Below are positions 18,187-48,027 of a stretch of 64,000 bases of DNA, one piece after another (the stretch's first letter is position 1; every line of letters starts with the position of its first letter). The translations under genes and the position numbers were made by a program. A model generated the notes under the pieces. It was given only the letters and a program-made list of their open reading frames with translations, did not search any database and was not told where the DNA came from. The DNA lies in the IMG/VR virus record IMGVR_UViG_3300046517_002304, positions 124,001-188,000 of that record; one strand, 5' to 3'.

Positions 18187-18952
18187 TTATTCGTTCTATT
18201 CCTTTGTTAAAGTATTCTTCGTTTTTTTCTATGCAGATAAAGTTTCTTTTAGTGCCTATACAAGCTACGGCGGTTGTCATAGAGCCAGCAGTATTATCTA
18301 GAACTAAATCACCTTCGTTAGTATAGGTTTTAATTAACCACTCAAATAATTCTACTGGTTTTTGTGTTGGAACAGTTGGCCTTGCTTCAGATTTAAACGG
18401 AAGTACGCTGATTGGGTTTTTTAAAGACGTATCTTTGTCCGTAGTCATTTTGTAGACTCCGGTAGACATATTGTTAAATTCACCGACTTGTTTATCCTTA
18501 AATTTTCTCTTATATCTTTTAATAGTTTGCTCTGATGCCGGCAACATTTGTGGGTTATATGTTGGGCTTTGCTTATAAAATATACAGATATTTTCATGCA
18601 TTTTCATTGGCATATACTTAGCTAATTGGAATGAACCACATTTAGTTTTTTGCCATATTAGTTCATATTTGAAATTCTCAATATTACTATTAATTAGCTT
18701 AGTCGTAAACGGTTGCGATGCAGTAAATGCCATAACCCCATTTGGTTTAATCAATCTGTTATAATGCTCCCATAAGCTATGCATAGGTATATTTTCATCC
18801 CATTTTACCCAGGTGGTGCCGTATGGAAGATCACATAAGATGAAATCTATGCTTTTTTCCTGTATATAATGCATAACATTGAGACAATCGCCTAAGCATA
18901 AAGAATTAGGCTGTATGGGGCTTTCCGATGTGTAATCTTTAATTATTTGCAT
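18164..18952 (-). CDS. DNA methyltransferase, N4C/N6A beta class
   Basis: GDCL..ILCDLPYG (motif IV) ...PTQKPVEL..VLDNTAGSMTT (motif I); start revised to ATG 18952. Confidence 0.9.
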   Translation of the reverse strand: MQIIKDYTSESPIQPNSLCLGDCLNVMHYIQEKSIDFILCDLPYGTTWVKWDENIPMHSLWEHYNRLIKPNGVMAFTASQPFTTKLINSNIENFKYELIWQKTKCGSFQLAKYMPMKMHENICIFYKQSPTYNPQMLPASEQTIKRYKRKFKDKQVGEFNNMSTGVYKMTTDKDTSLKNPISVLPFKSEARPTVPTQKPVELFEWLIKTYTNEGDLVLDNTAGSMTTAVACIGTKRNFICIEKNEEYFNKGIERINAFSSTI

Positions 18953-18988
18953 TATATATAAGGTACAACATATCATAGGGTAAATTGC

Positions 18989-27313: not shown

Positions 27314-27937
27314 TTAGGATTTATTACTATTTTCTAGTTCGGTGTTCCAGTAAAGTTCAGACAGGAATGCATCCCATGACTTCGGCATAACTCTACGATC
27401 AATGTTAAATATACTAAATTTTGGTTTAAATGGTTGTCTAATAAGCTTCATCCCGATTTCATCAGGCGTATTGTTGGCCTTGTACCTATTGCATTTGGTG
27501 CAAGCGATTACGCAATTAAACCAATTAGTTTTTCCATTTCTTGATACCGGTATAATGTGATCTATAGACAGCTCTTTGGTCCCAGGTGTAGCCCCACAAT
27601 ATTGACATTGATTGTTATCTCTGTTGTAGATAGCTCTACGATTAAACGGCACCTGTCTATTGGGAAAGCCATCGTATCTGGTTAAGAGTATGACCTCTGG
27701 AATTCTATATGCGGTACTTCTAGTTTTAATAACACTTTCATTATCGTTAGGACGAATTTGCGACCAATCATTCCATGTATAGGTGGAAAAACCGTTAATC
27801 GCGTCAACTATTCTTGCTTTTGGCTCATTGTTCTTATAGGTGCTGAACAGCTTGGAAATAGCCGACTCTAGAGGATTAATGCCAATAGGCATCCATGACT
27901 TATTGAGAACTAAAACCGGATGAGCGGCGACATACAT
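27314..27937 (-). CDS. HNH endonuclease (McrA-like)
   Basis: VLVLNKSW, PEVI, RD...CQYCG, SIDHIIPVSRNG...W.NCV.AC..CN..K. Confidence 0.9.
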   Translation of the reverse strand: MYVAAHPVLVLNKSWMPIGINPLESAISKLFSTYKNNEPKARIVDAINGFSTYTWNDWSQIRPNDNESVIKTRSTAYRIPEVILLTRYDGFPNRQVPFNRRAIYNRDNNQCQYCGATPGTKELSIDHIIPVSRNGKTNWFNCVIACTKCNRYKANNTPDEIGMKLIRQPFKPKFSIFNIDRRVMPKSWDAFLSELYWNTELENSNKS

Positions 27938-28729: not shown

Positions 28730-29467
28730 TTAGCTCCTGAGTTTATTAAAAATTGATTCGCTTAATCGTTCTTTTAACTCTAGGTTCATAGACGGAATCT
28801 CGCCGCCCACAAAGCAAGAGTATAAATAACACAAATTATCCATACCGTTTTTATCGGTGGTTGCCTTCTTTAACTTTAAACTAATTTCTTCATAACTGTC
28901 GTCTAAAAACAAACAACCGCCTGGATTTGATTTTGACATTTTAACAGATGGATTTTTTAAATCCTTAATTCTTCCCACTACAATCTCTGGTTCAGGTATA
29001 ACAAAATCTTCGCTGAAAACTCTGTTATATTTTTTTAGTAGCTTAGATGCATACTGAAGATGCTGTGTTTGATCTTCCCCAACAAGTACTTTTTTAAATC
29101 CTGCTACGTCGTGCGTCATCAAAACTGGATACGTTAATAAATGGGCGCTTGGATTAGACGACGACTTGTATTGTGTCATTCTTTCTAAATCGCCCATTGC
29201 GGATATTGAAAGAAGTTTGAAGTAAAATTCGGCATTAAAAACATCCTTTTGAATTATGATTTTAGAAACGCCAAATTTGTTCAGTAGCTCAATGCTATTC
29301 TTGATTTCCTGCCCAGGCGCATGATAGTTAGCAACTAAAACGCTAGCTCCAGCTTTTCCTGGCAGTATTACCGAGAAATAGTGACCAAGATGCAATTTGC
29401 CTGTTGGCCTGAACCCGCACAATTTATCACCAAAGACACACCATGTTTCTTCTCCTGAAAACCCCAT
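28730..29467 (-). CDS. trpS: compact tryptophanyl-tRNA synthetase (true start may be ATG 29444 via +1 frameshift)
   Basis: GFRPTGKLHLGH (HIGH), LERMTQYK, LLTYPVLMTHD, VGEDQTQH, KMSKS. Confidence 0.88.
   Translation of the reverse strand: MGFSGEETWCVFGDKLCGFRPTGKLHLGHYFSVILPGKAGASVLVANYHAPGQEIKNSIELLNKFGVSKIIIQKDVFNAEFYFKLLSISAMGDLERMTQYKSSSNPSAHLLTYPVLMTHDVAGFKKVLVGEDQTQHLQYASKLLKKYNRVFSEDFVIPEPEIVVGRIKDLKNPSVKMSKSNPGGCLFLDDSYEEISLKLKKATTDKNGMDNLCYLYSCFVGGEIPSMNLELKERLSESIFNKLRS
29427..29456 (-). promoter_or_regulatory. SD + 5-codon ORF (MVCLW*) with candidate +1 frameshift site CUU-UGG
   Basis: AGGAG-N7-ATG GTG TGT CTT TGG TGA; +1 slip at CTT.T joins the trpS frame (GGT GAT AAA TTG). Confidence 0.55.
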
Positions 29468-29493
29468 TTTACACTAAAAACTTTACTTGTCAA
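29466..29493 (-). promoter_or_regulatory. sigma70-like promoter for trpS
   Basis: TTGACA (29493-29488)-N16-TAAAAT (29471-29466). Confidence 0.55.
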
Positions 29494-29728
29494 GGCCCTT
29501 AGATGCAGAATAGCGACAGCGCAAGTAGTAAATCAATCCCGTTGGACCAAGTAATGGCTGCACACTTACAAGCTTATTGGCTATGGATGCCGTATTTAAA
29601 TTTTTAAATAGGGGAATAGACATATGAGAAAACATGTTAATATTTTTCCCGCTACACTTTGCGCATACCTGATGTTCATTTAATGGAACCAGTTTATCGG
29701 ATTTATTTCCACAGTAATCGCATATCAT
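29483..29728 (-). CDS. zinc ribbon fused to a major-capsid-protein segment
   Basis: MICDYCG..CAKC followed by 42 aa with 27 identities to MCP residues 71-112. Confidence 0.8.
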   Translation of the reverse strand: MICDYCGNKSDKLVPLNEHQVCAKCSGKNINMFSHMSIPLFKNLNTASIANKLVSVQPLLGPTGLIYYLRCRYSASKGLDK

Positions 29729-31204: not shown

Positions 31205-32607
31205 GATTCTCTCAATTTATAGAATCTTTTGGTTCATTTAATTATCGTGTTCCCGATGATCCAGAAGAACAATTATATGACTTCTATATGTTGAATTTGC
31301 TAAGAGGCAGAAATTCGCTTTATAACAAGGCTAATCAACATGGCTTAACCATAATGCCTAAGAAGCCAGAGTACGGCGGCGAAATGAATCATGAAGATAA
31401 AGTAGACTACATGCTGGATGAAGTGGCAAAAGTTCTTATACCAAAACTTAAATCAGATTTATTAGAAGCGGTTCTTTTTAGTATAACGGCAGAATTTAGA
31501 CATGGTGGCGACCGAGATACGCAAGAAATACCAATGAGCCATATGACAGATATGATTCGTAGACAAATGGGCGCTAAATATTCTAGAATATTTAGCGATT
31601 TTTTTAACCATTTAGACTCTTCTTTTGATGCATCGTTTAGGCCAAAAATTCAAGCAAATTCTCAATTGATGAAAAACACTATTAACAGTACTCCTATCTA
31701 TAACAGTAGAAGATTGGCATCTTATTCATCGATGGAAAAAAGTACCCATAATGAAAAAGACTTTGTAGAAATGGCTAAATTTGTTTTTGGGGAGGGGGAT
31801 TGGGACAAAGATTACGGTGGTCCTTCATGGGAACAGGCTTGTGATGCATGGCTCCAACTGTATAATTCTAAATCAGAAGATTCAGACATTATAGCGATTG
31901 ATCATATGTACGATATAGAGCACAATACAGGGAACATTCTTGACAAGAGCAATCACTTTTTAAAGAACGGGCAATTTACATGGCTCAGTAATGCCCTTAA
32001 TAAAAAAGCTAGAATTACTTCTCCGATGCAAATCATTGACGATATTTCTCCAGCAATGACACAAATAGCCTTGCCTGCCATAAAGTTAAAGTATGGCCAA
32101 ACATTAGAAGATAAAATGAAGGCTGATACATTTAAAACACAGATCCCAGGAGCTGGGTTTGATGACTTAATTAAAAAGGAATTTGACGAAAATCAAGGAA
32201 TATATGATGCAGGTATTCCTGAACTAAAAATGGCTAGAACTCTTAGGGGAATTTTAGCTGCTTATAAAGTGCGTAGAATTGACTTTAGAATCATTGAATT
32301 AGCTAAGTCTAAAATTAGAGTCCCATTAGACAGTCAAAAAATTAAACAGTTCTTTCAGCAAGAGTATCAAAATTGCAGAAATATAGAAACTGGTAACTTT
32401 GGTCATGTTAAGGTGCTTATGACTAAAGATTTAATATACGAAATACAAAAAAATTTAGAAGATCCATATGGCCATAGATCAGGAATAAAAGACAGAATAG
32501 CCGGTGAAACAAATTATGACGATGAAGTTATTAAGAGTTTAGTAGATTACTGTGAAAAGTTAGTTGAAGATGGCGGAAATGTTAGCTCAATATTAGCGGT
32601 TCGCTAA
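31201..32607 (+). CDS. putative internal head protein, paralog 2
   Basis: 468 aa; MRFSQFIES; first ~100 aa very similar to paralog 1. Confidence 0.7.
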   Translation: MRFSQFIESFGSFNYRVPDDPEEQLYDFYMLNLLRGRNSLYNKANQHGLTIMPKKPEYGGEMNHEDKVDYMLDEVAKVLIPKLKSDLLEAVLFSITAEFRHGGDRDTQEIPMSHMTDMIRRQMGAKYSRIFSDFFNHLDSSFDASFRPKIQANSQLMKNTINSTPIYNSRRLASYSSMEKSTHNEKDFVEMAKFVFGEGDWDKDYGGPSWEQACDAWLQLYNSKSEDSDIIAIDHMYDIEHNTGNILDKSNHFLKNGQFTWLSNALNKKARITSPMQIIDDISPAMTQIALPAIKLKYGQTLEDKMKADTFKTQIPGAGFDDLIKKEFDENQGIYDAGIPELKMARTLRGILAAYKVRRIDFRIIELAKSKIRVPLDSQKIKQFFQQEYQNCRNIETGNFGHVKVLMTKDLIYEIQKNLEDPYGHRSGIKDRIAGETNYDDEVIKSLVDYCEKLVEDGGNVSSILAVR

Positions 32608-33137
32608 GCTTCATTACCCCAGCAATACCAGCCTTCTCTTTTAGCTCTAGCATACATGTCTAATCGTGGTTCTGGCGATAGCTTTTCTACTAGCTTATAG
32701 AAATCATCTGGTTTCTCGCTATGCCTGCCTCTATCCCATGAAAAGCATGTTCCACTAGTAGCCTGTGAATGCCGTCCACCCATTCCAAAAGGATTTCCGT
32801 GTCTACTTCCTACCCGAGACACAAGTATATGTTCTGTATTACATCTAAAACGTCCTACGCCAAGCCCTGGCTTCTTCCAAGTCCAAAGTATGATTGGTTT
32901 AGCCTTCCATGCGCCAGCGACCGTATAGGCCCAATCTACGTGTTGTGCAAGGCACCATATGTATAAGTGTGCCTGTTTGGCAATCGGCGGCTTGATAGAA
33001 CAGATTTCGTCTAAGCTTAATGTGTTATAATGAGATTGTGGACTGCCCTTGGGCGCTTTTCCATTAATAATTGACATTTCTGGTGTCCAAGGCGGGTCAA
33101 CCACTATTGTGCGAAACTCTACATCAGGAAATTGCAT
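32604..33137 (-). CDS. MT-A70 family adenine methyltransferase
   Basis: IVVDPPW, LYIW, W.KPGLGVG..R.NTEH, HSEKP, MYAR..REGW..WGNE. Confidence 0.9.
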   Translation of the reverse strand: MQFPDVEFRTIVVDPPWTPEMSIINGKAPKGSPQSHYNTLSLDEICSIKPPIAKQAHLYIWCLAQHVDWAYTVAGAWKAKPIILWTWKKPGLGVGRFRCNTEHILVSRVGSRHGNPFGMGGRHSQATSGTCFSWDRGRHSEKPDDFYKLVEKLSPEPRLDMYARAKREGWYCWGNEA

Positions 33138-33395: not shown

Positions 33396-33614
33396 ATGAA
33401 AACTTGGACTCAATATCTAGAGGCTGTAGGCACACCAGCACCAGCAATTTTTATGCCAGGACTCTTTAATGGTCTAACAAACTTGGGGCCAGTAAGCGTA
33501 AGGGTAGTTGGCAATATACTACAAATACAAACCAATAGGGATGCGTCTAATCTAGTTCTTACAATGCCACAGATTCAGCAGCTTAAGCGAGATTTTAACT
33601 TAACGGTTATTTAG
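33396..33614 (+). CDS. small putative internal protein (IP-like), paralog
   Basis: MKTWTQYLE; G.FNG..NLG..VG..LQI..LT..Q.QQ shared with the previous gene. Confidence 0.65.
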   Translation: MKTWTQYLEAVGTPAPAIFMPGLFNGLTNLGPVSVRVVGNILQIQTNRDASNLVLTMPQIQQLKRDFNLTVI

Positions 33615-33821
33615 CTTTTTAATCTTTTCCAGACAATCTGTAACTTCATCTAATTTTTTGCTGGGATACTTACAAGTACCTAGTAGCAGCAAAAGGGCGT
33701 CCTCAACAAAGATCATATCCTTGTTACTTAACTTTTCGTCCTTAGTTGGAGAGCATACAATAAAAAACCAAAGAGCAGCTTCTATGAGTATATAAGCGAT
33801 AATGGCAGCGGCTAATGTCAT
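33600..33821 (-). CDS. small membrane protein
   Basis: N-terminal TM segment. Confidence 0.5.
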   Translation of the reverse strand: MTLAAAIIAYILIEAALWFFIVCSPTKDEKLSNKDMIFVEDALLLLLGTCKYPSKKLDEVTDCLEKIKKLNNR

Positions 33822-34177
33822 CGGAAAGCCTTAGTTGTAGTTTTAATGAAAGATTGATTTTCGCTATAAGATAAGGATTTAATGAGGTTTAAATCTAAGT
33901 ACTTAGTTTTCTTTAAAGGATGAATTGTTCCAACGTGTATTTTAAGAGTATCACCAGCCATGACGTAGACCGTACTGGCAAAATATGATATTGTTATATC
34001 TCCGCATCCTGCAAGCGGCAAAGAACAATACTTACTTACAAATAGAGATGTAGCACTCCAAGCAGATTTTGGGTTGAATATGGCATACATCTTGCCGTCA
34101 TCATCTTTCACTAAATTTACTCTGCGATAATCAGCGTTTGATAATTCTTTGTGACCGTTTAATAGTCCTGCGTACAT
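33818..34177 (-). CDS. tail-protein-like domain + C-terminal LIxSL module
   Basis: ELSNADYRRV..W.ATSL..AGDT resembles 14478-14915; ends KYLDLNLIKSLSYSENQSFIKT. Confidence 0.6.
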   Translation of the reverse strand: MYAGLLNGHKELSNADYRRVNLVKDDDGKMYAIFNPKSAWSATSLFVSKYCSLPLAGCGDITISYFASTVYVMAGDTLKIHVGTIHPLKKTKYLDLNLIKSLSYSENQSFIKTTTKAFR

Positions 34178-34261
34178 AATTGTTCTCCTGATATTTTATC
34201 GGCTCTCATGCAAATCAATCTTAATGACGATAGATTATTGTTATGAAAAGGAGATGCTGGA

Positions 34262-34582
34262 ATGACCGATAAAGAACTTATTGATTGGGCGCGGTTGATG
34301 TTAGGCGAACCGATTATAAAATTAGAGATAGATGATGAGCAAGTTCAATTTATAATTGACACAGCTAGAACTAACATTAAAGATGCTCAGTTTAAAACTA
34401 ATAAAATGGTTAAGAAAGCAGTATACAACGATTTGGTCCGTGAAGGCGTTCTAGCGTTATCTTGTTTGATGCTGGATAGGATCAATGGAGCATTTGCTCA
34501 TCCAGTGGAAGAAGAATGGTATCGGGGCGGCAAAGAAAAAGTTGAAGCATGGAAAGAGAAGTTAAAGGAGATTAAGGAATAA
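34262..34582 (+). CDS. miniature T4 gp13-like neck protein
   Basis: LIDWARLMLGEPIIKLEIDDEQV and EGVLAL..LML.RI match gp13-family terminal helices; 106 aa. Confidence 0.55.
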   Translation: MTDKELIDWARLMLGEPIIKLEIDDEQVQFIIDTARTNIKDAQFKTNKMVKKAVYNDLVREGVLALSCLMLDRINGAFAHPVEEEWYRGGKEKVEAWKEKLKEIKE

Positions 34583-34583
34583 C

Positions 34584-34946
34584 ATGAAGGAAGTTAAATC
34601 AGTAGAAGAAATAAAGTGTACCGACGACTTCAATAAGGAAGTGATTGTCAGCAAGCAATGTCTGCACACTGGTGTGATTTATTACTTTCTTAAAGGTGCT
34701 TGGACACCAGTTTATCCGCAAGAGGATGGCACATTCAGGTATCCATATAATTGCAATACAGTTATGCAGATAATGACATTGACGCCTGTAGTGGAGCGAA
34801 AGTCTTTGGTTGAAAGGCTCAGGGATCAGTCTAATAGTCCATCTTGGATTGTAAGACTTAGTAGTCGTCTTATGATTTTTAAATTGAAATGCGAATCTTT
34901 ATTAGATTCAGAAAAACCTTGGGTTGAAAGGTGGTTGGGGGAATGA
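34584..34946 (+). CDS. hypothetical protein
   Basis: 120 aa, SD AAGGA. Confidence 0.55.
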   Translation: MKEVKSVEEIKCTDDFNKEVIVSKQCLHTGVIYYFLKGAWTPVYPQEDGTFRYPYNCNTVMQIMTLTPVVERKSLVERLRDQSNSPSWIVRLSSRLMIFKLKCESLLDSEKPWVERWLGE

Positions 34947-35134
34947 TTGTAATTAGTGCTGAGTATAAGGAAATACCTATTAGCCAACCTATGGCTGAAT
35001 TTAAAAGAATTAGCATTCCTTTGATAAGAAGGATTTATCCTAGTTTAATTGACATGAGAAGTGATCTTTTCAGTATTAGAGGAGATTATGTTATTAGAAC
35101 GATAGATAGCGCTTATGAACATGGCTATGATTGA
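34943..35134 (+). CDS. small protein carrying major-capsid residues 65-83
   Basis: AEFKRISIPLIRRIYPSLI vs MCP ANFKRISIPLVRRIFPQLI (15/19); ATGA coupling with the upstream gene. Confidence 0.75.
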   Translation: MIVISAEYKEIPISQPMAEFKRISIPLIRRIYPSLIDMRSDLFSIRGDYVIRTIDSAYEHGYD

Positions 35135-35146
35135 TCGTATGATATT

Positions 35147-35365
35147 ATGAAGCTAAAAACAACTTGGAAATTTTGCGAAGAAATGAAAGAGATTCCAGAT
35201 AATACACGGCGGGATTTATTGCGCAATCTACTAAAGGACGAAGATGCATCATGGGGAACATCTAGAAGCGCAGAAGAAATGGAAAAACAATTAGATTATT
35301 TAATGGGATGTGGCGACAATCCTAGCGTAGCTCCAGTCAATGAAGAAATCAAAATCGGGACTTGA
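35147..35365 (+). CDS. small protein resembling the MCP N-terminus
   Basis: Ungapped K...TW-x8-I.D.T.R.....L alignment to MCP residues 17-48. Confidence 0.5.
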   Translation: MKLKTTWKFCEEMKEIPDNTRRDLLRNLLKDEDASWGTSRSAEEMEKQLDYLMGCGDNPSVAPVNEEIKIGT

Positions 35366-35665
35366 ACTATAATCAAGGTAGCCGAAGTCCATTCTACTTG
35401 GCCAGATGCCTTCTAGTGTGTAGGACTTTTCTCCGAATGATAGGACGCCGGTGCCAGTCGTCTTCTCTCCGTTATAATGATAGCAGTGAGACATAATCTC
35501 AAATATGCACTTAGGTTCGCCCATTTGATCACCATCATCGTGGAATTTGGTCTTTAGGCTTTCTCCAGAGTTGTTCTCAAGAATTTCTGGGTTAATGACT
35601 TGGAAGTTGTCTATGTGGCATTCTAGGCCATTAGGGAACGTAAGCTCCAATGTGTAATTGTTCAT
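35300..35665 (-). CDS. miniature T4 gp19-like tail tube protein
   Basis: GTGVL..YTLEGIWPSRMDFGYLDYSSS...WSY matches the gp19 C-terminal motif; 121 aa. Confidence 0.6.
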   Translation of the reverse strand: MNNYTLELTFPNGLECHIDNFQVINPEILENNSGESLKTKFHDDGDQMGEPKCIFEIMSHCYHYNGEKTTGTGVLSFGEKSYTLEGIWPSRMDFGYLDYSSSPDFDFFIDWSYARIVATSH

Positions 35666-35768
35666 GATTAGTTGTTGTGGGGGGGGTAGTGTATATAGGG
35701 GGAAATGATGGGTTTCTCTTATGATATGTGGGTTTTAAGCCGATAAAGTACTATAGCGCGGTGATACT

Positions 35769-37616
35769 ATGGGAAAAGAACGAGTAAGAACAACGATAGA
35801 ATATATTGCCAAGGCCAAAAATAAATGGAATGGATATTTTACATATCCGAATACTATTTTTATTGGCCGGTTTGGCAAAATTGAATTTGAGTGTCCAGTA
35901 CATGGCGCTATGACAATGACGGCTAGAGCACATCTAGATTCTGGTTGTAACAAATGTAATGGATATTTTAAGCACACTGGGGCAACGGCAAAAGCCAAAA
36001 TGCTCCAAATACATGGGTATTTTTGCGACTATTCTAAAATACCCGATGAATTAGAATTCGGAGTCAATACTATTGTAGAAATAGGTTGCCCTAAACATGG
36101 ATTCTTTAAAATCAAAATTGAAGACCATTTTAATGCGGTGCATCCATGCCGTAGCTGTGCCAATGAAGCTAGGGGAATTGCTAATAAAAAAACAACAGAA
36201 GAATGGATATCTGAAGCAAAACTTAAATGGGGCCAAACGTGTAATTATGACAAATCGGTTTATGTAAATAAAGAAACCTATATTGATATTTATTGTATTT
36301 ATCATGGGTGGATAAAACAGAAACCGAATAATCATGTAGAAAATGGATGCCATCATTGTAGCGGCCGTGGTATTGGCAAGCATGACAGATATAGCTTTAT
36401 TAAAAGGGCGATACAAATTAATGGATATATTTATGATTACTCTAAAGTATTAGATAATTTTAGTGGATTAAACTCTGTTATAGAACTAGGATGTCCAACG
36501 CATGGGTGGTTTAAAGTTGTAGCGGCTAATCATCTTACAGAAGGACGAGGATGCTCAAAATGTAATGGTGGTGTTTTTTATACACATAATGACTTCTTAG
36601 AAAAGGCAAATAAAAAGCATAATAATAAATTCAAATATCTATCAAAATATACTAGATCACATGATCCAATTACGATAGAGTGCTCTAAGCACGGTGTATT
36701 TGAACAGTTGGCCTATGTCCATCTTCAGTCAATCCATGCTTGCCAGAAGTGTGCTGCTGAATTAGGGCAATCCGCTGGCGAAAACGAGGTAGCGGATTAT
36801 ATCGCCAATTTAGGCATTAATATTATTAGAAATGACAATACTTTTCTTGGGAAGTCAAAAGAAATAGATATTTACTTACCCGATCAAAAGGTTGGAATTG
36901 AATATTGTGGCCTTTATTACCATAGGGAAGGCATGCAGACATATAAATTTAACCATAATATTAAAACTAATTTAGCAGATGAAAAAAATATATTTTTAAT
37001 TCATTTGTTTGACAAGGAATGGAAAGAGCAAAAAGAAATTGTTAAATCTAGGATATCTGGCATATTGGGGAAAAATAAGACGATATATGCTAAAAACACA
37101 GAGATAGTTCAATTACATAAATACGAAAAAGATAAATTTTTACAGGAAACGCATATACAAGGAAAAGATAATTCCAGTATTTATTTCGGCTTAAAATATA
37201 AGGATCAGATTGTTTCATGCATGACATTTGGGCACCCAAGATTTAATAAAAACTATAACTGGGAAATGCTTAGGTTTAGTTCTATTTTGTATACCCATAT
37301 AGTGGGCGGAGCTAGCAAGCTGTTGTCTCACTTTAGAAAAATTTATCCAGGAACAATTATTTCTTACGCTGACAGGAGATGGTCACAAGGAAAGTTGTAT
37401 TACATATTAGGATTTAACTTAGATAAAGTTACAGAGCCTAGTTATCATTATTATAATGTTTCTACACATGCATTTCATAATCGTCTAAAATTTCAAAAGT
37501 ATAAGCTTAAAGATATGCCTTATTATGATGAAAAATTAACCGAAGAAGAAATTATGATGTTAAATGGATATGATAGAGTTTGGGATGCAGGACAAATGCG
37601 GTTTGTTCTTAAGTAA
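35769..37616 (+). CDS. Hef-like/DUF723-repeat homing endonuclease
   Basis: Repeated YDYSK..CP.HG.F...H...CxxC modules; EIDIYLP..GIEYCG.YYH nuclease; C-terminal GGASKLL..ISYADRRWS domain. Confidence 0.8.
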   Translation: MGKERVRTTIEYIAKAKNKWNGYFTYPNTIFIGRFGKIEFECPVHGAMTMTARAHLDSGCNKCNGYFKHTGATAKAKMLQIHGYFCDYSKIPDELEFGVNTIVEIGCPKHGFFKIKIEDHFNAVHPCRSCANEARGIANKKTTEEWISEAKLKWGQTCNYDKSVYVNKETYIDIYCIYHGWIKQKPNNHVENGCHHCSGRGIGKHDRYSFIKRAIQINGYIYDYSKVLDNFSGLNSVIELGCPTHGWFKVVAANHLTEGRGCSKCNGGVFYTHNDFLEKANKKHNNKFKYLSKYTRSHDPITIECSKHGVFEQLAYVHLQSIHACQKCAAELGQSAGENEVADYIANLGINIIRNDNTFLGKSKEIDIYLPDQKVGIEYCGLYYHREGMQTYKFNHNIKTNLADEKNIFLIHLFDKEWKEQKEIVKSRISGILGKNKTIYAKNTEIVQLHKYEKDKFLQETHIQGKDNSSIYFGLKYKDQIVSCMTFGHPRFNKNYNWEMLRFSSILYTHIVGGASKLLSHFRKIYPGTIISYADRRWSQGKLYYILGFNLDKVTEPSYHYYNVSTHAFHNRLKFQKYKLKDMPYYDEKLTEEEIMMLNGYDRVWDAGQMRFVLK

Positions 37617-37627
37617 TATTAGTCGAA

Positions 37628-37655
37628 TAAAAAACCCCCGATTTCTCGGGGGTTT
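37628..37655 (-). terminator. intrinsic terminator of the capsid gene
   Basis: AAACCCCCGA-GAAA-TCGGGGGTTTTTT on the minus strand. Confidence 0.9.
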
Positions 37656-37683
37656 AGTCGTCTTCCAAGTCTAATTATTAAAA

Positions 37684-39135
37684 TTAGATGCTGAAATTGT
37701 TGATAGCGATGGTAGCGTAGAAGCGTGCACCGTTATTTAGTAATTTAAGTCCGTATCTTGTCATCAAGCCTCTACGTGGGCAGAAGCTATTAGGGTCAAG
37801 TACCAGTGGAGTCTGCATTAAAGGAACGTATGGGCAATAGAAGAACCCTGAATCCATATAAGTATCACCCTTATAACCCATGAGTAGGTTATTGGTTGGG
37901 AACTGTGGATCCTTATAAAGCTTCCAACGGTTGCTGACAGTACCGACATACTGAACGCCTAGCGAGCTAGTGAACGATTCTGAAGGTGCTGGAGCGAAAC
38001 CTGCTGTGGCTGTCTCAAAGATTGAGGCAACTTCAGGTGAGCAGATAATCCAGTTTGCACCGCTACGTAGCGTTTTCTTATGGATGATGTTGCTAACCTG
38101 TGAAACCTTAACGAATAGGGCTTCGTACTTTTCCTTAACGGTATCACCTAGGGCAGTGTTGTAATCCCAAGTGACGTTAGTACCAGCGTTGTTACGGAGG
38201 TTGGTGATGATTTCACGGTCAATTTCAAGATTGATTTCTTGAGCAAGAACGGTCGTCAATTCCTGTTCCGCATCTAGCGAATACTGTGAACGTAAGTCCT
38301 GTTGAGCTTCAAAGCTCCAGACAGCGCGTAGCTTACGGGTAACGGCGGTAATGGTTTCCTGTTCAACCGTTAGATTAACTTCGGGCTGATCAGTATTGCA
38401 TTCCATGTTATAGTCGTAAGTGACGACGATGCTGTTAGTGCTAGGATCGCTTGACCAAGTTAGAGTGATGGCACCAGTCGTGAGATTGATGCTACCAGCG
38501 GTAACGTTTGGTGAATTGCTCGTAGAACTAATAGTAAAGGTACCCGACGCATCAATGGTGAAGGTCTGAATGGCAGTGCTACCCTGGTAGATAGTACCTG
38601 ATTCAGTTCCAGCAAGAATTGGCGTGTGCTTTAGAGTGTAAGTAAGAGTAGTTGTACCACCAGCGTTGGTGACGGTTTCAAGACTGACAGTCTGGCTAGA
38701 ATAGAAAATATCAAGATTTACTAGACCGCTTGAGAGCTGTTGTAGTGAAAGAGCATCGTCTGTTGGGAAACTAGACTTGTTAGTCGCACCTAGTGTAGCA
38801 CCCTTGTCAGTCGCATAGCGAAAGCGGAGGTAATAAACTAGACCGACTGGACCGAGTAATGGCTGAACAGAAACGATCTTGTTAGCGATTAGCTGTGGGA
38901 AAATACGACGAACGAGGGGGATACTAATACGTTTGAAGTTAGCGACATCGCCTGCGGTCGTGCTTGAAGATTCGTTGAGGTTGCATGATAGTTCCTGATT
39001 TTCCATTAGGATGGCAGTGTTCTGACGAACTGTCTTATCCTTAATGTCGTTCAGGAGACCACGGTCGCCCCAAGTTTTTTCGCACTTGGCACCTTCGTGT
39101 AAAAATTCCCCTTTGGCTGTACCAAAATTTGACAT
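37684..39135 (-). CDS. gp23: major capsid protein, T4 gp23 family
   Basis: ENQE, VRR..P.LIA...VQP..GP.G, RKLRAVWSFEAQQDL, EINLEIDREI, FYCPYVPL, F.P..GLMTRYG; probable cleavage at LNE55. Confidence 0.96.
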   Translation of the reverse strand: MSNFGTAKGEFLHEGAKCEKTWGDRGLLNDIKDKTVRQNTAILMENQELSCNLNESSSTTAGDVANFKRISIPLVRRIFPQLIANKIVSVQPLLGPVGLVYYLRFRYATDKGATLGATNKSSFPTDDALSLQQLSSGLVNLDIFYSSQTVSLETVTNAGGTTTLTYTLKHTPILAGTESGTIYQGSTAIQTFTIDASGTFTISSTSNSPNVTAGSINLTTGAITLTWSSDPSTNSIVVTYDYNMECNTDQPEVNLTVEQETITAVTRKLRAVWSFEAQQDLRSQYSLDAEQELTTVLAQEINLEIDREIITNLRNNAGTNVTWDYNTALGDTVKEKYEALFVKVSQVSNIIHKKTLRSGANWIICSPEVASIFETATAGFAPAPSESFTSSLGVQYVGTVSNRWKLYKDPQFPTNNLLMGYKGDTYMDSGFFYCPYVPLMQTPLVLDPNSFCPRRGLMTRYGLKLLNNGARFYATIAINNFSI

Positions 39136-39223
39136 AATATTTCTTTATCCTTTGTTTAATTATTTTTAGTTGTTAATTTCTATAACTTATCAGCAACAAG
39201 CTTTAGAGTTATAAAAATTGGTT

Positions 39224-40135
39224 CTATTTATTATCGTAAGCGAGTTTGCGCCATTGAGCTTCAATAGAAGTTGTATCTTCATCAATTCTGGTTGGTTCTT
39301 CTGTCGCTACCGCTTCTTTAAGAACGACAACTTCTTGTCGGCTCTTATCGTTAACAACAACGCCCTTACCCTCTACTGTCTTCTTCTTTTCGCTTCTTAC
39401 CTTTTCAGTGCCTTCGGAAATAACCTGTGCTGAGGCACGAACTTGTTCATTTAGCTTATCGCGTTCCGCTGTTAGGCGGTTAGCTCTGGCTTCTAATACC
39501 TTGACCTGTTGCTTGGCTTCAGTTACCTGACGGCCTAGCTCTTCGGCTTTGCTAGCTGTTACGCTGGCGTAATCTTCGTCGCTGAGCCAATCAGATGCTA
39601 GATTGAGAACTTTGTCCCAAGCTAGTTTGTGCTCAAGCATGTATGGGTCATTAAGAATCTGTGCTTTGGCCATTTCGTGTAGCTCTTCTTCCTTGACGCT
39701 TAGGAACTGGTCAATCTTGTCAACTAGGTCAGTCTTAACTGCGTGTAGTTCACGTTCTTTGGCTTCGTTGATGGTTAGCTCAAGCTCTTCGTTCTTCTTG
39801 CGTTCGGCAAGAATTAGATCTTTGGCTTGTTCATGAGCCTCTTCTAGCTGTACTTCAAACTCTTCGCGCTGTGTTTCAAGACGATTCTTGAAGTCAACGA
39901 TAATTTCATAAGCTTCGTTATATCCCTTTAGGGCAACCTTCTCAGCTTCAAGCTTCTCAGCTTCAACTGTCTTATAGGCTGATTCAAGATTAGCATTATA
40001 TTCGGTTTCTAGTTCAGCTCTCGCTCCGTCTAGGAATTCGCTGACAGCTTCAGTAAGCTTGGCGCGATCACCTTCTGGTACTAGGGCTTCTAGAGCCTGG
40101 AAAACTTTGCTTTTTGCGTCTGTATTCTTAGTCAT
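39224..40135 (-). CDS. prohead scaffold/core protein (gp22-like)
   Basis: Acidic coiled-coil protein between protease and MCP. Confidence 0.8.
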   Translation of the reverse strand: MTKNTDAKSKVFQALEALVPEGDRAKLTEAVSEFLDGARAELETEYNANLESAYKTVEAEKLEAEKVALKGYNEAYEIIVDFKNRLETQREEFEVQLEEAHEQAKDLILAERKKNEELELTINEAKERELHAVKTDLVDKIDQFLSVKEEELHEMAKAQILNDPYMLEHKLAWDKVLNLASDWLSDEDYASVTASKAEELGRQVTEAKQQVKVLEARANRLTAERDKLNEQVRASAQVISEGTEKVRSEKKKTVEGKGVVVNDKSRQEVVVLKEAVATEEPTRIDEDTTSIEAQWRKLAYDNK

Positions 40136-40814
40136 TGTTTAGGTTCTCTCTAATTAATTGTGATTCCTTGTTAATCATATGTCCCATAAAGGAAATTAAA
40201 GTATTAACATTTACTTTATTTAGGGATGCTGTCTCATTTTTTATTTGTATATTCTCTGAATTAATGGTTGAAACTGACTCAACTTTACGTGCAATAGCAC
40301 GAATTTCAGATGGGTTGTTGACAATATCAAAGGTTACTAGGTTATAATTGTCGTTGATTTCAAGAACTCCGTCTGCATTAGTAGTTCCCGAACCTACACC
40401 TCTTGTGCTCACACCAACCGTAATATTTGATTCTAGTAAAGCCTTAAGAACCTTACCGTTTGGAGTATTTAGAACTTCAGCATTGCCCCAAAGTTCATTC
40501 CCCTCCCACCATAGCTTGGTTACAACCGCGCAAGCTGTTTCAAGCTTAACTACACTTGTATCTGGATGGTCAAGACTAGAGATTAAAGCTCTCTGATCTA
40601 TGAATTTCTGTAGACGATTTACATTCTGTTCTAGAATTGATTTCTTATACTTACGCTTATTCTGATTAACGGTCTCGGCGACACTAAAAATGCCTGTAAA
40701 GACGGTTGGTCCACCCTTGTGGGACTCATTTAAATTCAGTGTGGCATAGCCGCCGTTGTCTAGAAGGAGATAATCGCTCATATGTTTTTGATCTTTACAA
40801 AAAGGGTCTGACAT
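40128..40814 (-). CDS. gp21: prohead protease, T4 gp21 family (start possibly 40781)
   Basis: NQNKRKY, LDHP, LNTPNG, GVSTRGVGS, TFDIVNNPS. Confidence 0.92.
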   Translation of the reverse strand: MSDPFCKDQKHMSDYLLLDNGGYATLNLNESHKGGPTVFTGIFSVAETVNQNKRKYKKSILEQNVNRLQKFIDQRALISSLDHPDTSVVKLETACAVVTKLWWEGNELWGNAEVLNTPNGKVLKALLESNITVGVSTRGVGSGTTNADGVLEINDNYNLVTFDIVNNPSEIRAIARKVESVSTINSENIQIKNETASLNKVNVNTLISFMGHMINKESQLIRENLNND

Positions 40815-42724: not shown

Positions 42725-44044
42725 GTGCCTAAAAAACTTACTACTGAACAGTTCGTTGAAAAAGCTATAAAAGTGCATGGGGAGCGGTACGATTATAGTT
42801 TGGTGGAGTATATTAGCAATAAGGTGATGGTGCAGATAATTTGTCCATTACACGGTATTTTTGAACAAAGACCCGATGGACATTTATCTAGCATTGTTGG
42901 CGGGTGTCCCGAATGTGGGCGGATACAAGTCATACAAACCAAAAAAGACCATGGCTTAAGTCATACCGTAGAATATCAAACGTGGCATAGAATGATGAGC
43001 AGATGTTATAATAAAAACCATCATCATTATTTGGACTATGGAGCACGAGGTATTATGGTTTGTGAAAGGTGGCATGATTTTTTAAACTTTTTAGAAGACA
43101 TGGGACTAAGACCAGTAAATTTATCTTTAGATAGGATTGATTGTAATGGCAATTATTGTCCTGAAAATTGTAGATGGTCAAGCAATAAAGAACAACTTAA
43201 TAATAGAAGAAATGTTAAAAAATATACCGTTAATGGCATGACCAAAACGCTTACTGGATGGTGTGAAGAAACTGGATTATCTTATAAATGTTTAAGTAAT
43301 AGGTTTCGCAACGGGTGGAGCATTGAAGATGCTATTAATACGCCTAAAATTACCTATAACAAGAAGGATGGCAATGAAGTTAAAAAGAAAAAATCTTCAT
43401 CTAAAGAGGTAATAATTATTAAAGAAAAAACACTTGAAGATTTTAAAAATAAATGTAATTTTAAAGATATATCTGGCAAAAAAATCGGCACTTTGACTGC
43501 GATTAAGCCGCTTGGAATTAATTGCTACGGACAAGTGGTATGGCTTTTTACATGTGAGTGCGGAGATAAAATTAATTATATATGCAGAGGCCGCCTATGC
43601 GAAAGATGTAATTCACCAAGGTTTGCCAAGATTACTAATCCCAAAGAGTATGGCACATGGTGTCGTATGATTGAGAGATGTAAAAATGACATAGATTATA
43701 TTAATAAAAACGTTACTGTTTGTCCAAGATGGCTAGATGGTTTTGATAACTTTCTTGCCGACATGGGGATGTCGCCTCATTATAAATGTAGTCTAGATAG
43801 AATTAATAATAACTTAGGTTATTACAAAGGAAATTGTAGGTGGGCTACCGATGAGCAGCAACAAAGAAATAAAAGCGATACTATCATGCTTACAGTTAAT
43901 GGCGAAACCAAACCGCTTGTTGAATGGTGTGAAATTACGGGAATGTCCAGATCTTGCCTAAGGTCAAGAATTCAATCCGGCTGGTCTGTAGAAGATGCTG
44001 TACTAACTCCTTTTCGTAAAATTAAAAGAAAAAACCCTGTATAA
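42725..44044 (+). CDS. homing endonuclease: DUF723-like + two HNH modules
   Basis: VHGERYDYS..CPLHG; SLDRIDCNGNYCPENCRW and SLDRINNNLGYYKGNCRW. Confidence 0.85.
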   Translation: MPKKLTTEQFVEKAIKVHGERYDYSLVEYISNKVMVQIICPLHGIFEQRPDGHLSSIVGGCPECGRIQVIQTKKDHGLSHTVEYQTWHRMMSRCYNKNHHHYLDYGARGIMVCERWHDFLNFLEDMGLRPVNLSLDRIDCNGNYCPENCRWSSNKEQLNNRRNVKKYTVNGMTKTLTGWCEETGLSYKCLSNRFRNGWSIEDAINTPKITYNKKDGNEVKKKKSSSKEVIIIKEKTLEDFKNKCNFKDISGKKIGTLTAIKPLGINCYGQVVWLFTCECGDKINYICRGRLCERCNSPRFAKITNPKEYGTWCRMIERCKNDIDYINKNVTVCPRWLDGFDNFLADMGMSPHYKCSLDRINNNLGYYKGNCRWATDEQQQRNKSDTIMLTVNGETKPLVEWCEITGMSRSCLRSRIQSGWSVEDAVLTPFRKIKRKNPV

Positions 44045-46132: not shown

Positions 46133-46297
46133 ATGAGCAATTATTGGATTGATTTGATAAAAAGAGAAGAAGAATTAGAAAAATTACGCAAAGAACAAGA
46201 ACGCCGCGATTTTGAGATAATTTATCAAGAACTTCAAATGCGAGAAAAGCTAAAGGCCCTTTGGAACTCACAAAGGAAACAAGGCCAGAAAGTTTAG
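46133..46297 (+). CDS. 54-aa coiled-coil protein (not in ORF track)
   Basis: MSNYWIDLIKREEELEKLRKEQERR...; TATATA 5 nt upstream; stops 2 nt before the terminase ATG. Confidence 0.55.
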   Translation: MSNYWIDLIKREEELEKLRKEQERRDFEIIYQELQMREKLKALWNSQRKQGQKV

Positions 46298-46299
46298 TA

Positions 46300-48027
46300 A
46301 TGGGTGGGATAGACTACGCCGCTGAATATAAAAAGTGCGCAAAAGACTTTGTTTACTTTTGTGAAACCTATGTTAAAATTCGGCATAGCACTAAAGGCAA
46401 GGTGCCTTTTAAGCTATATGATTACCAAAAGCGCACTCTTGAAGATTTTGAAAATCATAGGTACAACATAGTATTAAAATTTAGACAGGGCGGTTTAACT
46501 ACGCTTGCCGTTATATGGGCCGCTTGGAAGGCAATGTTTAACACAAAGCAGAATCAAATCTCTTTCGTGTCTAGAACTGATCGCGAAGCAAAAATTTCTG
46601 CTCGTATCGTTACATTTTTTCTTCATGAGTTGCCGGATTGGTTAAAACCAGAAATGGAAGCGCGTCCAGCAGCACATGAAAAGAAATTCATGGAAACTGG
46701 TGGATCTATAATATTTTCTACTGTTAAGGCGGTTCGCGGTCGTTCATTGGCATTATTAATTATAGACGAAGCGGCATTCATTTCAGATATGGAAGAAAAC
46801 TGGGCTGACTTACAGCCTGCTCTTTCTGGTGGCGGTAGATGCATTGTAATTTCTACGCCTAAGGGAAAAGGTAATTGGTATGCTGTTGAATATCATAAGG
46901 CTCTTAACAATGAAAATCAGTTTCATGTAATTGATATTGACGTATCAGAACATCCAGATTACAATAACCCAAAGTGGATAGCAGAACAAAAATCTGCTCT
47001 AGGAGAAAAAAGATTCGGTCAAGAAGTTTTACGCCAATTCTTGGCTCCAGGCGAAACATTTCTTTCCAATAGTTTAATTAATGACTTAGATCTTGCCACT
47101 AGGGGAACGCCACCGATGGCTAGAAGATTTCCGCTGTGGGACACGACCACTAGAGATGGGGAAAAAGGCGCTTTATGGATATGGAAAGCGCCTGTTGAAG
47201 GCAAAGATTATATTATTGCTGCGGATAGCGGTGAAGGCGTAGGCGAAGAGGGAGACTTTAGTGCCTTCCAAGTTTTTGACGTTGCGGAATGTGAACAAGT
47301 TGCTGAATTTTATAGCAACTCTATTCCACCATATACGTATGCCCAAATCCTTAGTCAGATTGCTACATCTTATAATTACGCAAATTTAGTGGTTGAAGGC
47401 AACGGTCCTGGTATTGCTACGCTGGCTGAATTAACAAGCAAATTATTTTATACACATCTATATGGAAAAAGAGTTAGAGACGGTTTTAAGCCAGGATATT
47501 TAACAGGTGGCACAAATAGAGTCGCAATGTTTGATACGCTCCAAGCAGCGCTTATGAATAAAACAGTTGTGTTAAAAAGCACAAGATTGATCAAAGAGTT
47601 CAATACATTTATTTTTAATGCATCTAAGAAACGTCCTGAAGCCGCAAAGGGAACTCATGATGATTTAATCATGGCCTTAGCGATTGCGCTGCAAGTGCGC
47701 AGTGAGTTATATGCTAACATAGCTAGGTATACTCCATCAGCCGAACATATTAAGGATATTGCTCCGAATGCCTTATCTATAAGCGCAATCAAAGCAGAGT
47801 TAGAAACTTTATTTAGCTCAAGCTACCCATCTTACAAAGATGGACCTCCGCCAATTATAGATCCAAATGAAGAAATATTTGGTAAAGATATAAATGAAGC
47901 AATGTTTAAACAACATCAGGCCGCGCGCTTTGGAAATGATGTCTTAAAAGAATTTGGATGGGCCGTTTTGCCGTTTATTTTTACTGCTTGTGAAGTATTA
48001 ACAAATTCGGTTAGTGGACTAGCCTAG
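46300..48027 (+). CDS. terL: terminase large subunit, T4 gp17 family
   Basis: YF...YVKI..F.LYDYQ, KFRQGGLTT, LLIIDEAAF, ISTP.G, IIAADSGEG..DFS, HDDLIMA; start revised to ATG 46300. Confidence 0.93.
   Translation: MGGIDYAAEYKKCAKDFVYFCETYVKIRHSTKGKVPFKLYDYQKRTLEDFENHRYNIVLKFRQGGLTTLAVIWAAWKAMFNTKQNQISFVSRTDREAKISARIVTFFLHELPDWLKPEMEARPAAHEKKFMETGGSIIFSTVKAVRGRSLALLIIDEAAFISDMEENWADLQPALSGGGRCIVISTPKGKGNWYAVEYHKALNNENQFHVIDIDVSEHPDYNNPKWIAEQKSALGEKRFGQEVLRQFLAPGETFLSNSLINDLDLATRGTPPMARRFPLWDTTTRDGEKGALWIWKAPVEGKDYIIAADSGEGVGEEGDFSAFQVFDVAECEQVAEFYSNSIPPYTYAQILSQIATSYNYANLVVEGNGPGIATLAELTSKLFYTHLYGKRVRDGFKPGYLTGGTNRVAMFDTLQAALMNKTVVLKSTRLIKEFNTFIFNASKKRPEAAKGTHDDLIMALAIALQVRSELYANIARYTPSAEHIKDIAPNALSISAIKAELETLFSSSYPSYKDGPPPIIDPNEEIFGKDINEAMFKQHQAARFGNDVLKEFGWAVLPFIFTACEVLTNSVSGLA

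What the first reader, a model, noticed from the sequence alone, without database searches (positions are those of the whole stretch)
34943..35134. Second, independent capture of the Gol-region capsid peptide
Seen: AEFKRISIPLIRRIYPSLI (15/19 to MCP 65-83) sits in otherwise unrelated sequence, with heavily changed codons (aga att agc att cct vs cgt att agt atc ccc). It keeps the RR..P.LI half that the 29483 ORF has replaced, so the two ORFs cover complementary, overlapping halves. Inference: two captures of the same ~45-aa window of a 483-aa protein suggest this epitope is under specific pressure.
Basis: partly seen in the sequence, partly recalled or inferred. Interest (0 to 1): 0.7.

Follow-up and report, generated by a model that had tools for sequence, protein, structure and literature searches.

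The report
Shrunken copy of mini-capsid-peptide gene
A 63-residue gene of a 511-kb soil phage carries 20 residues of the most conserved stretch of its capsid protein, but it is a cut-down member of an old, undescribed family of small huge-phage proteins built around that stretch, not a fresh copy of the phage's own capsid gene.

Summary
ORF 34943-35134 (+) encodes a peptide that matches 15 of 19 residues of capsid protein (MCP) 65-83, and only 4 of the 15 conserved residues use the same codon.

The "second independent capture" reading does not hold. The peptide is 19/19 identical to P0004, a small protein of another huge phage. Its DNA is 85% identical to a third phage's small gene and shows no BLASTN match to the resident MCP gene. 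It also carries three residues typical of the small proteins and absent from 72 MCPs.

P0004 belongs to a family of 65-135-residue proteins. Members hold MCP 64-112, the segment homologous to the T4 Gol/EF-Tu-binding stretch, plus a basic run and an acidic/aromatic tail. I found at least 47 tail-bearing representatives. Synonymous sites are saturated while dN is 0.17-0.31, and gene order is conserved (small gene, PTH2, HNH). The 29483 ORF is the positional orthologue of that family.

The finding's ORF keeps only the first 20 core residues and at best a weak tail. It is a minimal or decaying paralogue.

Related phages also carry small ORFs with other MCP pieces, portal pieces and terminase pieces. 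The Gol segment is therefore the main hotspot, not the only one.

Function is unproven. The likeliest role is a mimic of the MCP N-terminal segment.

The parts
34943..35134 (+). 63-aa ORF (P0003), the finding: a reduced member of the mini-Gp23N small-protein family
34991..35050 (+). The 20 codons (M17-I36) homologous to MCP 64-83. Residues 18-36 are identical in all 19 positions to the same stretch of P0004.
35090..35119 (+). C-terminal stretch V50-E59, which lines up with the family's tail motif. The likeness is weak and not significant on its own.
   Evidence: tail profile rank 291 of 10,429 ORF ends
34584..34946 (+). Upstream 120-aa ORF of unknown function. Its stop overlaps the start of the finding's ORF (ATGA), an arrangement typical of translational coupling.
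29483..29728 (-). 81-aa ORF (P0002): a zinc-ribbon-like N-terminus plus MCP 84-112-like core, with no tail. It is the positional orthologue of the family.
27314..27937 (-). 207-aa HNH endonuclease, 50-51% identical over its full length to the HNH that follows the small gene in L018, L027 and L029. This is the synteny anchor.
28730..29467 (-). 245-aa class I (Trp/Tyr) tRNA-synthetase-like ORF directly after P0002. The family's usual neighbourhood is also rich in translation genes.
37684..39135 (-). Major capsid protein, 483 aa, Gp23 family (P0001)
38800..38946 (-). MCP codons 64-112, the segment that the small proteins carry. It aligns to T4 gp23 88-136 and is the MCP's top conservation peak.
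35769..37616 (+). 615-aa HNH-type homing endonuclease between the finding's ORF and the MCP gene. Homologues occupy the same place beside the MCP in two relatives.

Best explanation
Shown:
- The ORF is a shortened, diverged paralogue of an old family of small huge-phage proteins, which I call mini-Gp23N.
- Family members are 65-135 aa. They consist of the most conserved segment of the Gp23-type capsid protein (MCP 64-112, homologous to the T4 Gol segment), a basic run, and an acidic/aromatic end. The end has two forms: one of the type W-R-S-I-E-D-P-F-E-P, and one ending W-K-K-E-G-F.
- The family arose from the 5' part of an MCP gene, because several members still carry remnants of the propeptide. 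It has been kept as a protein-coding gene in many phages.
- In this phage the ORF at 29483 is the copy in the conserved position, and the ORF at 34943 is an extra copy.
- The extra copy kept the first 20 core residues and lost the rest to unrelated sequence.

Inferred:
- The proteins have no fold of their own. They probably act as free-standing mimics of the N-terminal segment of the nascent capsid protein and occupy whatever partner recognises that segment.
- My ranking of partners is: host EF-Tu/translation, as for T4 Gol (about 0.3); the capsid assembly machinery (about 0.3); a host sensor of capsid peptides (about 0.2).
- The finding's own ORF is either a minimal version that carries half of the motif or a decaying copy, at about even odds.
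For: Identity and origin:
- The peptide is 19/19 identical to P0004.
- Nucleotide identity is 85% over 55 nt to the small gene in L027, and there is no hit to the resident MCP gene. The counts are 45/57 against 33/57.
- The residues E, I and S at three positions are mini-typical. The log-odds is +15 bits, and the highest of 72 MCPs is 7.1.
- In a tree the ORF lies next to P0004 and P0005.

Family reality:
- 25 small proteins align over their full length, tail included.
- A profile search of 1.8 billion representatives gave 191 hits at E<=1e-10. Of the 174 proteins in hand, 33 have tail A and 14 have tail B.
- dN is 0.17-0.31 in the core with synonymous sites saturated, between orthologues in conserved gene order.
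- The gene order is MetRS, small gene, PTH2, HNH, ArgRS, RF-1.
- The window's HNH is 50-51% identical to those HNHs.
- Propeptide remnants are present in P0019, P0033, P0041, P0107 and P0122.
- Other members also lack the second half (P0028, P0029, P0107, P0122) or the first half (P0067, P0093, L116).

Mimic idea:
- AlphaFold2 gives no confident fold (mean pLDDT 59, pTM 0.23).
- The core keeps the same conserved residues as the MCPs.
- The segment aligns to T4 gp23 88-136.
- The T4 Gol stretch binds EF-Tu domains II-III and is the most conserved part of gp23 (PMC3014915).
Against: - No orthologue of the finding's ORF exists outside this phage. Contigs from other samples are identical, so selection on this copy cannot be measured.
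- Its tail likeness is not significant.
- It is not in the family's usual gene order.
- This genome has no ORF with a canonical tail.
- The 49-column tree cannot show a single origin for the family.
- Against an EF-Tu partner: some members carry Tat-like or membrane-anchor N-termini. The same tail also sits on small ORFs with a C-terminal MCP segment and on non-MCP proteins, including a gp32-like SSB.
- No binding partner has been shown by any test.
Confidence: 0.6

Rival explanations
1. The ORF is a second, independent capture of a piece of this phage's own capsid gene, kept because this epitope is under specific pressure.
For: Both small ORFs of the window match the same roughly 50-aa part of the MCP and keep complementary halves. 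The segment is the MCP's conservation peak.
Against: The peptide and its DNA are closer to small genes of other phages than to the resident MCP. The 29483 ORF lies in the family's conserved gene order. Synonymous sites against the resident MCP are at saturation, with 4 of 15 codons shared.
Confidence: 0.05
2. The ORF has no function. It is a relic of a mini-Gp23N gene, or of recombination driven by the neighbouring homing endonuclease, that happens to remain open in a variable region next to the MCP gene.
For: - It keeps only 20 core residues, and the rest is unrelated.
- The tail likeness is not significant.
- A 615-aa homing endonuclease lies 630 bp away.
- The DNA downstream of the MCP is not conserved among 14 relatives.
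- Related phages hold larger, low-identity MCP pieces that look like decaying copies: 107-254 with an internal stop, 138-420, and 317-435.
Against: The frame is open. The start is coupled to the upstream ORF by an ATGA overlap inside a run of same-strand ORFs. The 19 residues are unchanged at the protein level relative to P0004 despite 14 of 57 nucleotide differences. Other family members with a reduced core keep the tail and look functional.
Confidence: 0.3
3. The family, and this ORF with it, works in capsid assembly. The MCP-like segment docks on MCP, scaffold or portal to control polymerisation of a very large head, or as a minor head component.
For: - The core keeps the residues that the MCP keeps.
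- One small protein joins the C-terminal and N-terminal conserved MCP segments (P0049).
- Some members are membrane-anchored. From my own knowledge, T4 proheads start on the inner membrane.
- Where contig length is known, family members lie on large contigs (46 to 511 kb).
- In this phage both copies lie within 8 kb of the head genes.
Against: Elsewhere the gene sits among translation and nucleotide-metabolism genes, not head genes. None of about 80 relatives has such an ORF within 10 kb of the MCP.
Confidence: 0.3
4. The family is a set of decoys. Pieces of the proteins that bacterial immunity senses (MCP, portal, terminase) are made as small proteins that occupy or mislead the sensors.
For: - In these genomes the MCP is the long protein with the most short partial paralogues: G000 2-3, G002 3, G003 4.
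- Portal and terminase pieces occur too.
- Lit and CapRel sense MCPs through short motifs, and Avs families sense MCP (10.64898/2026.01.04.697583). That Avs families also sense portal and terminase is from my own knowledge.
- Architectures are varied and turn over fast.
Against: For Lit, a free Gol peptide is the activator (PMC3014915), so a faithful copy should trigger the system rather than block it. No defence system is known for the unknown hosts. My literature searches found no precedent for capsid-peptide decoys.
Confidence: 0.15

Closest known systems
T4 Gol peptide of gp23 (activator of the e14 Lit protease; binds EF-Tu)
   Same: The core of the small proteins is homologous to the same stretch of the capsid protein. 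MCP 64-112 aligns to T4 gp23 88-136. Gol works as a short peptide of about 29 residues outside the capsid fold, and it is the most conserved part of gp23 (PMC3014915).
   Different: Gol is part of the capsid gene, not a gene of its own. The exact T4 residues of Gol (93-122) are from my memory and unverified. EF-Tu binding by the small proteins is untested. The finding's ORF would cover only about the first half of Gol.
Pfam PF07068 Gp23 major capsid protein family
   Same: Family members such as P0002 and P0004 pass the Pfam Gp23 cut-off on positions 1-55 of the model. Automatic cluster names read 'Gp23 domain-containing protein'.
   Different: They hold under 15% of the domain and cannot form an HK97-type fold. 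The finding's ORF does not reach any Pfam or PHROG threshold.
Gene fragments left beside free-standing homing endonucleases in T4-like phages
   Same: A homing endonuclease gene lies between the ORF and the capsid gene, and homologues sit beside the MCP in relatives. An HNH gene is part of the family's conserved gene order.
   Different: The family is conserved at the protein level with saturated synonymous sites. The ORF shares no detectable DNA similarity with the resident capsid gene. This is not a recent co-conversion product.
C-terminal acidic/aromatic tips of single-strand-binding proteins (E. coli SSB, T4 gp32, T7 gp2.5)
   Same: The family's tail (basic run, then acidic residues, Pro, and Phe or Trp) recurs at the end of the gp32-like SSB of phage record G001 (tail profile E 1.9e-5, Pfam gp32 E 1.8e-12). 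That SSB tips are protein-docking motifs is from my own knowledge.
   Different: The SSBs of G000, G002 and G003 end differently. No partner is known. The finding's ORF has at most a weak version of the tail.

Membership tests
   63 aa, core at residues 18-36, both ends inside the contig
   19/19 to P0004; family profile E 4e-9; +15 bits mini against MCP profile
   Replaced by unrelated sequence in all three frames. A few other members also lack part of it.
   V-I-R-T-I-D-S-A-Y-E lines up with the motif. It scores -1.1 bits and ranks 291 of 10,429 ORF ends. A loose pattern hits it, but I wrote that pattern after seeing it.
   Not met for 34943. Met for the 29483 ORF, whose HNH is 50-51% identical.
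Gp23 major capsid protein (PF07068) | Match to the domain above the curated cut-off; HK97-type fold | tested here: not met
   No Pfam or PHROG hit for the 63-aa protein. Only 20 residues are homologous.
T4 Gol element | Homologous position in the capsid protein | tested here: met
   MCP 64-83 aligns without gaps to T4 gp23 88-107. The overlap with Gol residues rests on my unverified memory of 93-122.
T4 Gol element | Binds EF-Tu and makes it a substrate of Lit | not testable with these tools
   This needs biochemistry or a genetic test in lit-carrying E. coli. No computational result here bears on it.
Homing-endonuclease by-product (recent co-conversion or duplication of the target gene) | DNA-level similarity to the resident target gene next to the endonuclease | tested here: not met
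   The endonuclease is adjacent, but nucleotide identity to the MCP gene is 34/60 with no BLASTN hit.

The most novel reading that the evidence does not exclude
Huge phages of this clade deploy a toolkit of small proteins, each made of a short, highly conserved piece of a core virion protein joined to a shared basic/acidic-aromatic docking tail. The pieces come from the MCP N-terminal Gol-like segment, the MCP C-terminal segment, and possibly portal and terminase. The small proteins would act as molecular mimics that capture host factors or immune sensors which recognise those pieces. For the Gol-like core the target would be EF-Tu or a Lit-like system. The finding's ORF and the 29483 ORF would be two specialised halves of such a mimic.
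Probability: 0.15. Interest if true: 0.9.

Novelty: new variant of a known kind. Interest (0 to 1): 0.62.

Why it matters
The T4 Gol stretch is a classic case of a capsid peptide that acts outside the capsid: it binds EF-Tu and triggers Lit. Why it is the most conserved part of gp23 has never been settled.

This work finds that many uncultivated huge phages keep that stretch as a separate small gene, under purifying selection, with its own tail and often among translation genes. That gives a natural, portable version of the peptide with which the question can be tested directly.

It also shows that small ORFs resembling capsid fragments should not be read as fresh captures or as junk without checking for a family. 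Finally, the capsid gene, more than any other long gene in these genomes, has short partial paralogues. That pattern needs an explanation.

Tried and rejected
- **Complex prediction.** E. coli EF-Tu with the family alignment A2 returned no answer (score 0.00, partner pLDDT about 24). This is not evidence either way.
- **AlphaFold2 of A2.** No confident fold, so no fold search was run.
- **Megablast of 33-40 kb against phage records.** No match.
- **TBLASTN of P0002 and P0003 against 50,697 phage records.** Only the MCP genes were hit, one place per record. No small copies turned up in cultured phages or in LR756511.1 at that sensitivity.
- **Rfam on 27-40 kb.** No intron or other RNA family, which argues against an exon-plus-intron read-through origin.
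- **Promoter and terminator scan.** Nothing above the shuffled background.
- **RNA runs.** None hold the phage. DNA contigs from four other samples are identical, so there is no expression or population-variation evidence.
- **Tail of P0003.** The profile test was not significant. The loose pattern that hits it was written after seeing it.
- **Neighbours of P0003** (120-aa, 106-aa, 72-aa and 121-aa ORFs). No family hits, and no homologues near other family members.
- **Phylogeny of the 49-column core.** Too short to decide between one and several origins.
- **Search for relatives of the C-terminal-piece protein (L115).** One further member only.
- **Chance similarity and assembly artefact.** Both rejected.

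Full report
**Setting**

The window is bases 124001-188000 of a 511,233-bp virus record with terminal repeats. It is a huge phage found in soil and rhizosphere metagenomes. The head module is present:
- portal at 48935-51430
- large terminase at 46261-48027
- prohead protease at 40128-40814
- a 303-aa ORF at 39224-40135, possibly the scaffold
- the 483-aa Gp23-type major capsid protein (MCP) at 37684-39135, minus strand

The closest deposited phage is LR756511.1 (595 kb), whose MCP is 61% identical. IMG/VR relatives have MCPs 61-68% identical.

**The observation**

ORF 34943-35134 encodes 63 residues.
- Residues 18-36 match MCP 65-83 at 15 of 19 positions. The pairwise E-value is 4e-9 and the genome-wide E-value is 0.002.
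- Of the 15 conserved residues, only 4 use the same codon.
- The ORF start overlaps the stop of the upstream ORF in an ATGA.
- Independent samples give identical contigs across 33600-39200.

The second ORF, 29483-29728, matches MCP 53-112 at 49% identity (E 5e-18). It has a zinc-ribbon-like N-terminus and has lost the RR..P.LI part.

**Where the peptide comes from**

A search of 5.8 billion proteins with the 63-aa product returned two other small proteins, not capsid proteins. They are P0004 (81 aa) and P0005 (91 aa).

P0004 has the same 19 residues without a single change. It then continues through the rest of the MCP segment to about MCP 112 and ends in an unrelated tail. Searching with P0004 gave 25 proteins of 65-108 aa that align over their full length, tail included.

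A profile search of 1.84 billion representatives gave 2,658 hits at E<=1e-3 and 191 at E<=1e-10. Of the 174 proteins in hand:
- 33 carry tail A: a basic run, then an aromatic residue, R, x, I/L/V, two acidic residues, P, F/W
- 14 carry tail B: ending W-K-x-E-G-F

Three orthologues from conserved gene order (P0004, P0013, P0014), plus P0025 from a different neighbourhood, differ at saturated synonymous sites. dN is only 0.17-0.31 in the core and 0.38-0.52 in the tail for the three tail-A orthologues (0.68-1.03 in pairs with P0025). The genes are therefore maintained as coding sequence.

The usual gene order is MetRS, small gene, PTH2, a roughly 205-aa HNH, ArgRS, RF-1. Several members still begin with a remnant of the MCP propeptide. 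The family therefore stems from the 5' part of an MCP gene.

**Placing the two window ORFs**

Three lines place the 34943 peptide with the small genes rather than the MCPs.
- Its DNA is 85% identical over 55 nt to the small gene of L027 and 77% to that of P0004. It has no BLASTN match to the resident MCP gene, where identity is 33/57.
- It has E, I and S at three positions where 72 MCPs have other residues and the small proteins often have these. The log-odds is +15 bits, and no MCP exceeds 7.1 in leave-one-out scoring.
- On a poorly resolved 49-column tree it sits with P0004 and P0005, and the labels "MCP" and "mini" cluster far more than shuffled labels do.

The 29483 ORF is followed on the same strand by an aminoacyl-tRNA-synthetase-like gene and, 1.5 kb on, by an HNH gene. 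That HNH is 50-51% identical over its full length to the HNH in the family's gene order. The 29483 ORF is the positional orthologue.

Neither ORF is therefore a fresh capture from this phage's MCP. The 34943 ORF is an extra copy. Its sequence after residue 36 is unrelated to the family in all frames, and its end resembles the tail only weakly (rank 291 of 10,429).

Reduced members exist elsewhere. Some lack the second half of the core and some lack the first, but those keep a clear tail. This genome has no ORF with a canonical tail.

**Is the segment a hotspot?**

Partly.
- Among 55 MCPs, residues 71-100 are the top conservation peak (0.94). Next come 371-400 (0.93) and 421-440 (0.85).
- The large family covers the first peak.
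- Related records also hold small ORFs with MCP 412-474 joined to the same kind of tail (L114, L115, P0030).
- A 35-residue stretch of MCP 356-390 sits inside a cytidylyltransferase-like protein.
- An MCP 5-70-like piece occurs in G003, and larger low-identity pieces cover 107-254, 138-420 and 317-435.
- A self-comparison of four genomes shows that the MCP has more short partial paralogues than any other long protein. Portal and terminase pieces also occur.
- Detection favours conserved segments, so the peaks are partly a bias.

**How it may work**

- The family has no predicted fold of its own.
- It keeps the residues that MCPs keep.
- The segment aligns to T4 gp23 88-136. In T4 the Gol stretch works as a short peptide, binds EF-Tu domains II-III, inhibits its GTPase and triggers Lit. 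Its conservation led others to propose that all gp23 proteins bind EF-Tu (PMC3014915).
- The family's frequent neighbours are translation genes.

I therefore favour a free-standing mimic of the nascent MCP N-terminal segment that occupies that segment's partner. EF-Tu and the capsid assembly machinery are about equally likely partners, and an immune sensor is less likely.

Several observations speak against a purely EF-Tu role.
- Some members have Tat-like or membrane-anchor N-termini.
- Some members carry the tail at the N-terminus.
- One protein joins the C-terminal and N-terminal MCP segments.
- The same tail occurs on a gp32-like SSB and on other proteins of record G001.

None of these partners has been shown.

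**Known or new?**

Automatic annotation calls these proteins Gp23-domain proteins. My literature searches found no description of free-standing Gol-like genes or of capsid-peptide decoys.

I rate the family as a new variant of a known kind, namely partial paralogues of the Gp23 capsid gene. I rate the finding's ORF as a reduced member of it.

Noticed in passing
window 35769-37616 (+); L015 11565-13301; L083 11387-13048: A 615-aa HNH-type homing endonuclease (phrog_559, several zinc-ribbon repeats) sits directly beside the MCP gene. Homologues at 31-32% identity hold the same place in two relatives. Otherwise the DNA on that side of the MCP is not conserved among 14 relatives.
   Followed up: partly
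G000:C1:412479-413498 (-) and 412311-412475 (-), outside the window (locus L004): A 340-aa ORF with a Tat-like N-terminus (RREFL plus a hydrophobic run) whose middle resembles MCP 16-80 (34% identity). After a TAA it is followed at once by a roughly 54-aa ORF that is 44% identical to portal 683-723.
   Followed up: partly
G000:C1:28613-29917 (-), outside the window (locus L003): A 434-aa ORF whose N-terminal part looks like an Hsp20/alpha-crystallin domain by eye (not tested). Its C-terminal part resembles the MCP insertion region 104-244 (25-26% identity, E 1e-4).
   Followed up: no
L114 1441-1911 (-), L115 1432-1701 (-), P0030: A second small-protein type: MCP 412-453 (the Y-x-P-x-V-P-L-T-Q-T-P-V-V-L-D-P stretch) joined to a tail ending F-R-D-L-D-D-D-W-N-W or similar. 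Three members were found.
   Followed up: partly
G001:C1:85297-86124 (+) (L152 9297-10124); G001 89753-90022; G001 296282-297196: In the 340-kb record that holds a P0013-type small gene, the family's tail also ends three other proteins: the gp32-like SSB (Pfam gp32 E 1.8e-12), a 90-aa ORF, and (weakly) a 305-aa N-terminal terminase-ATPase-like protein. The SSBs of G000, G002 and G003 end differently.
   Followed up: partly
G003:C1:18991-19845 (+), 166259-166768 (+), 176139-176363 (-), 200075-200704 (-), 54923-55393 (-): One 262-kb record holds a second N-terminal terminase piece and four separate ORFs with MCP pieces (about 5-70, 74-103, 107-254 and 424-474). The pieces hardly overlap and lie far apart on both strands.
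   Followed up: partly
proteins P0052, P0088, P0049, P0074, P0121, P0151, P0053, P0056, P0077: Variant architectures of the family: the tail motif placed before the core; the C-terminal plus N-terminal MCP segments in one small protein; and Tat-like or transmembrane N-termini in front of the core.
   Followed up: no
L028 (477-kb JGI contig) 1987-2826, 5248-6276, 18930-19997: The contig with small protein P0025 also has three other MCP-related ORFs: a 279-aa MCP-like ORF lacking the N-terminal 137 residues, a cytidylyltransferase-like protein with a 35-residue MCP 356-390 insert (63% identical), and a divergent 355-aa Gp23 protein whose Gol-like stretch is far less canonical than that of its small protein.
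   Followed up: no
L029 10303-10428 (+): A 42-codon open frame directly after the small gene P0014 matches only the tail part of the family profile (E 1.5e-4).
   Followed up: no
window 42725-44044 (+), 27314-27937 (-), 3085-10827 (-), 32604-33137 (-): Further genes seen: a second large HNH endonuclease (439 aa) inside the head module, the 207-aa HNH of the family's gene order, a 2,580-aa ORF, and an MT-A70-type methyltransferase.
   Followed up: no
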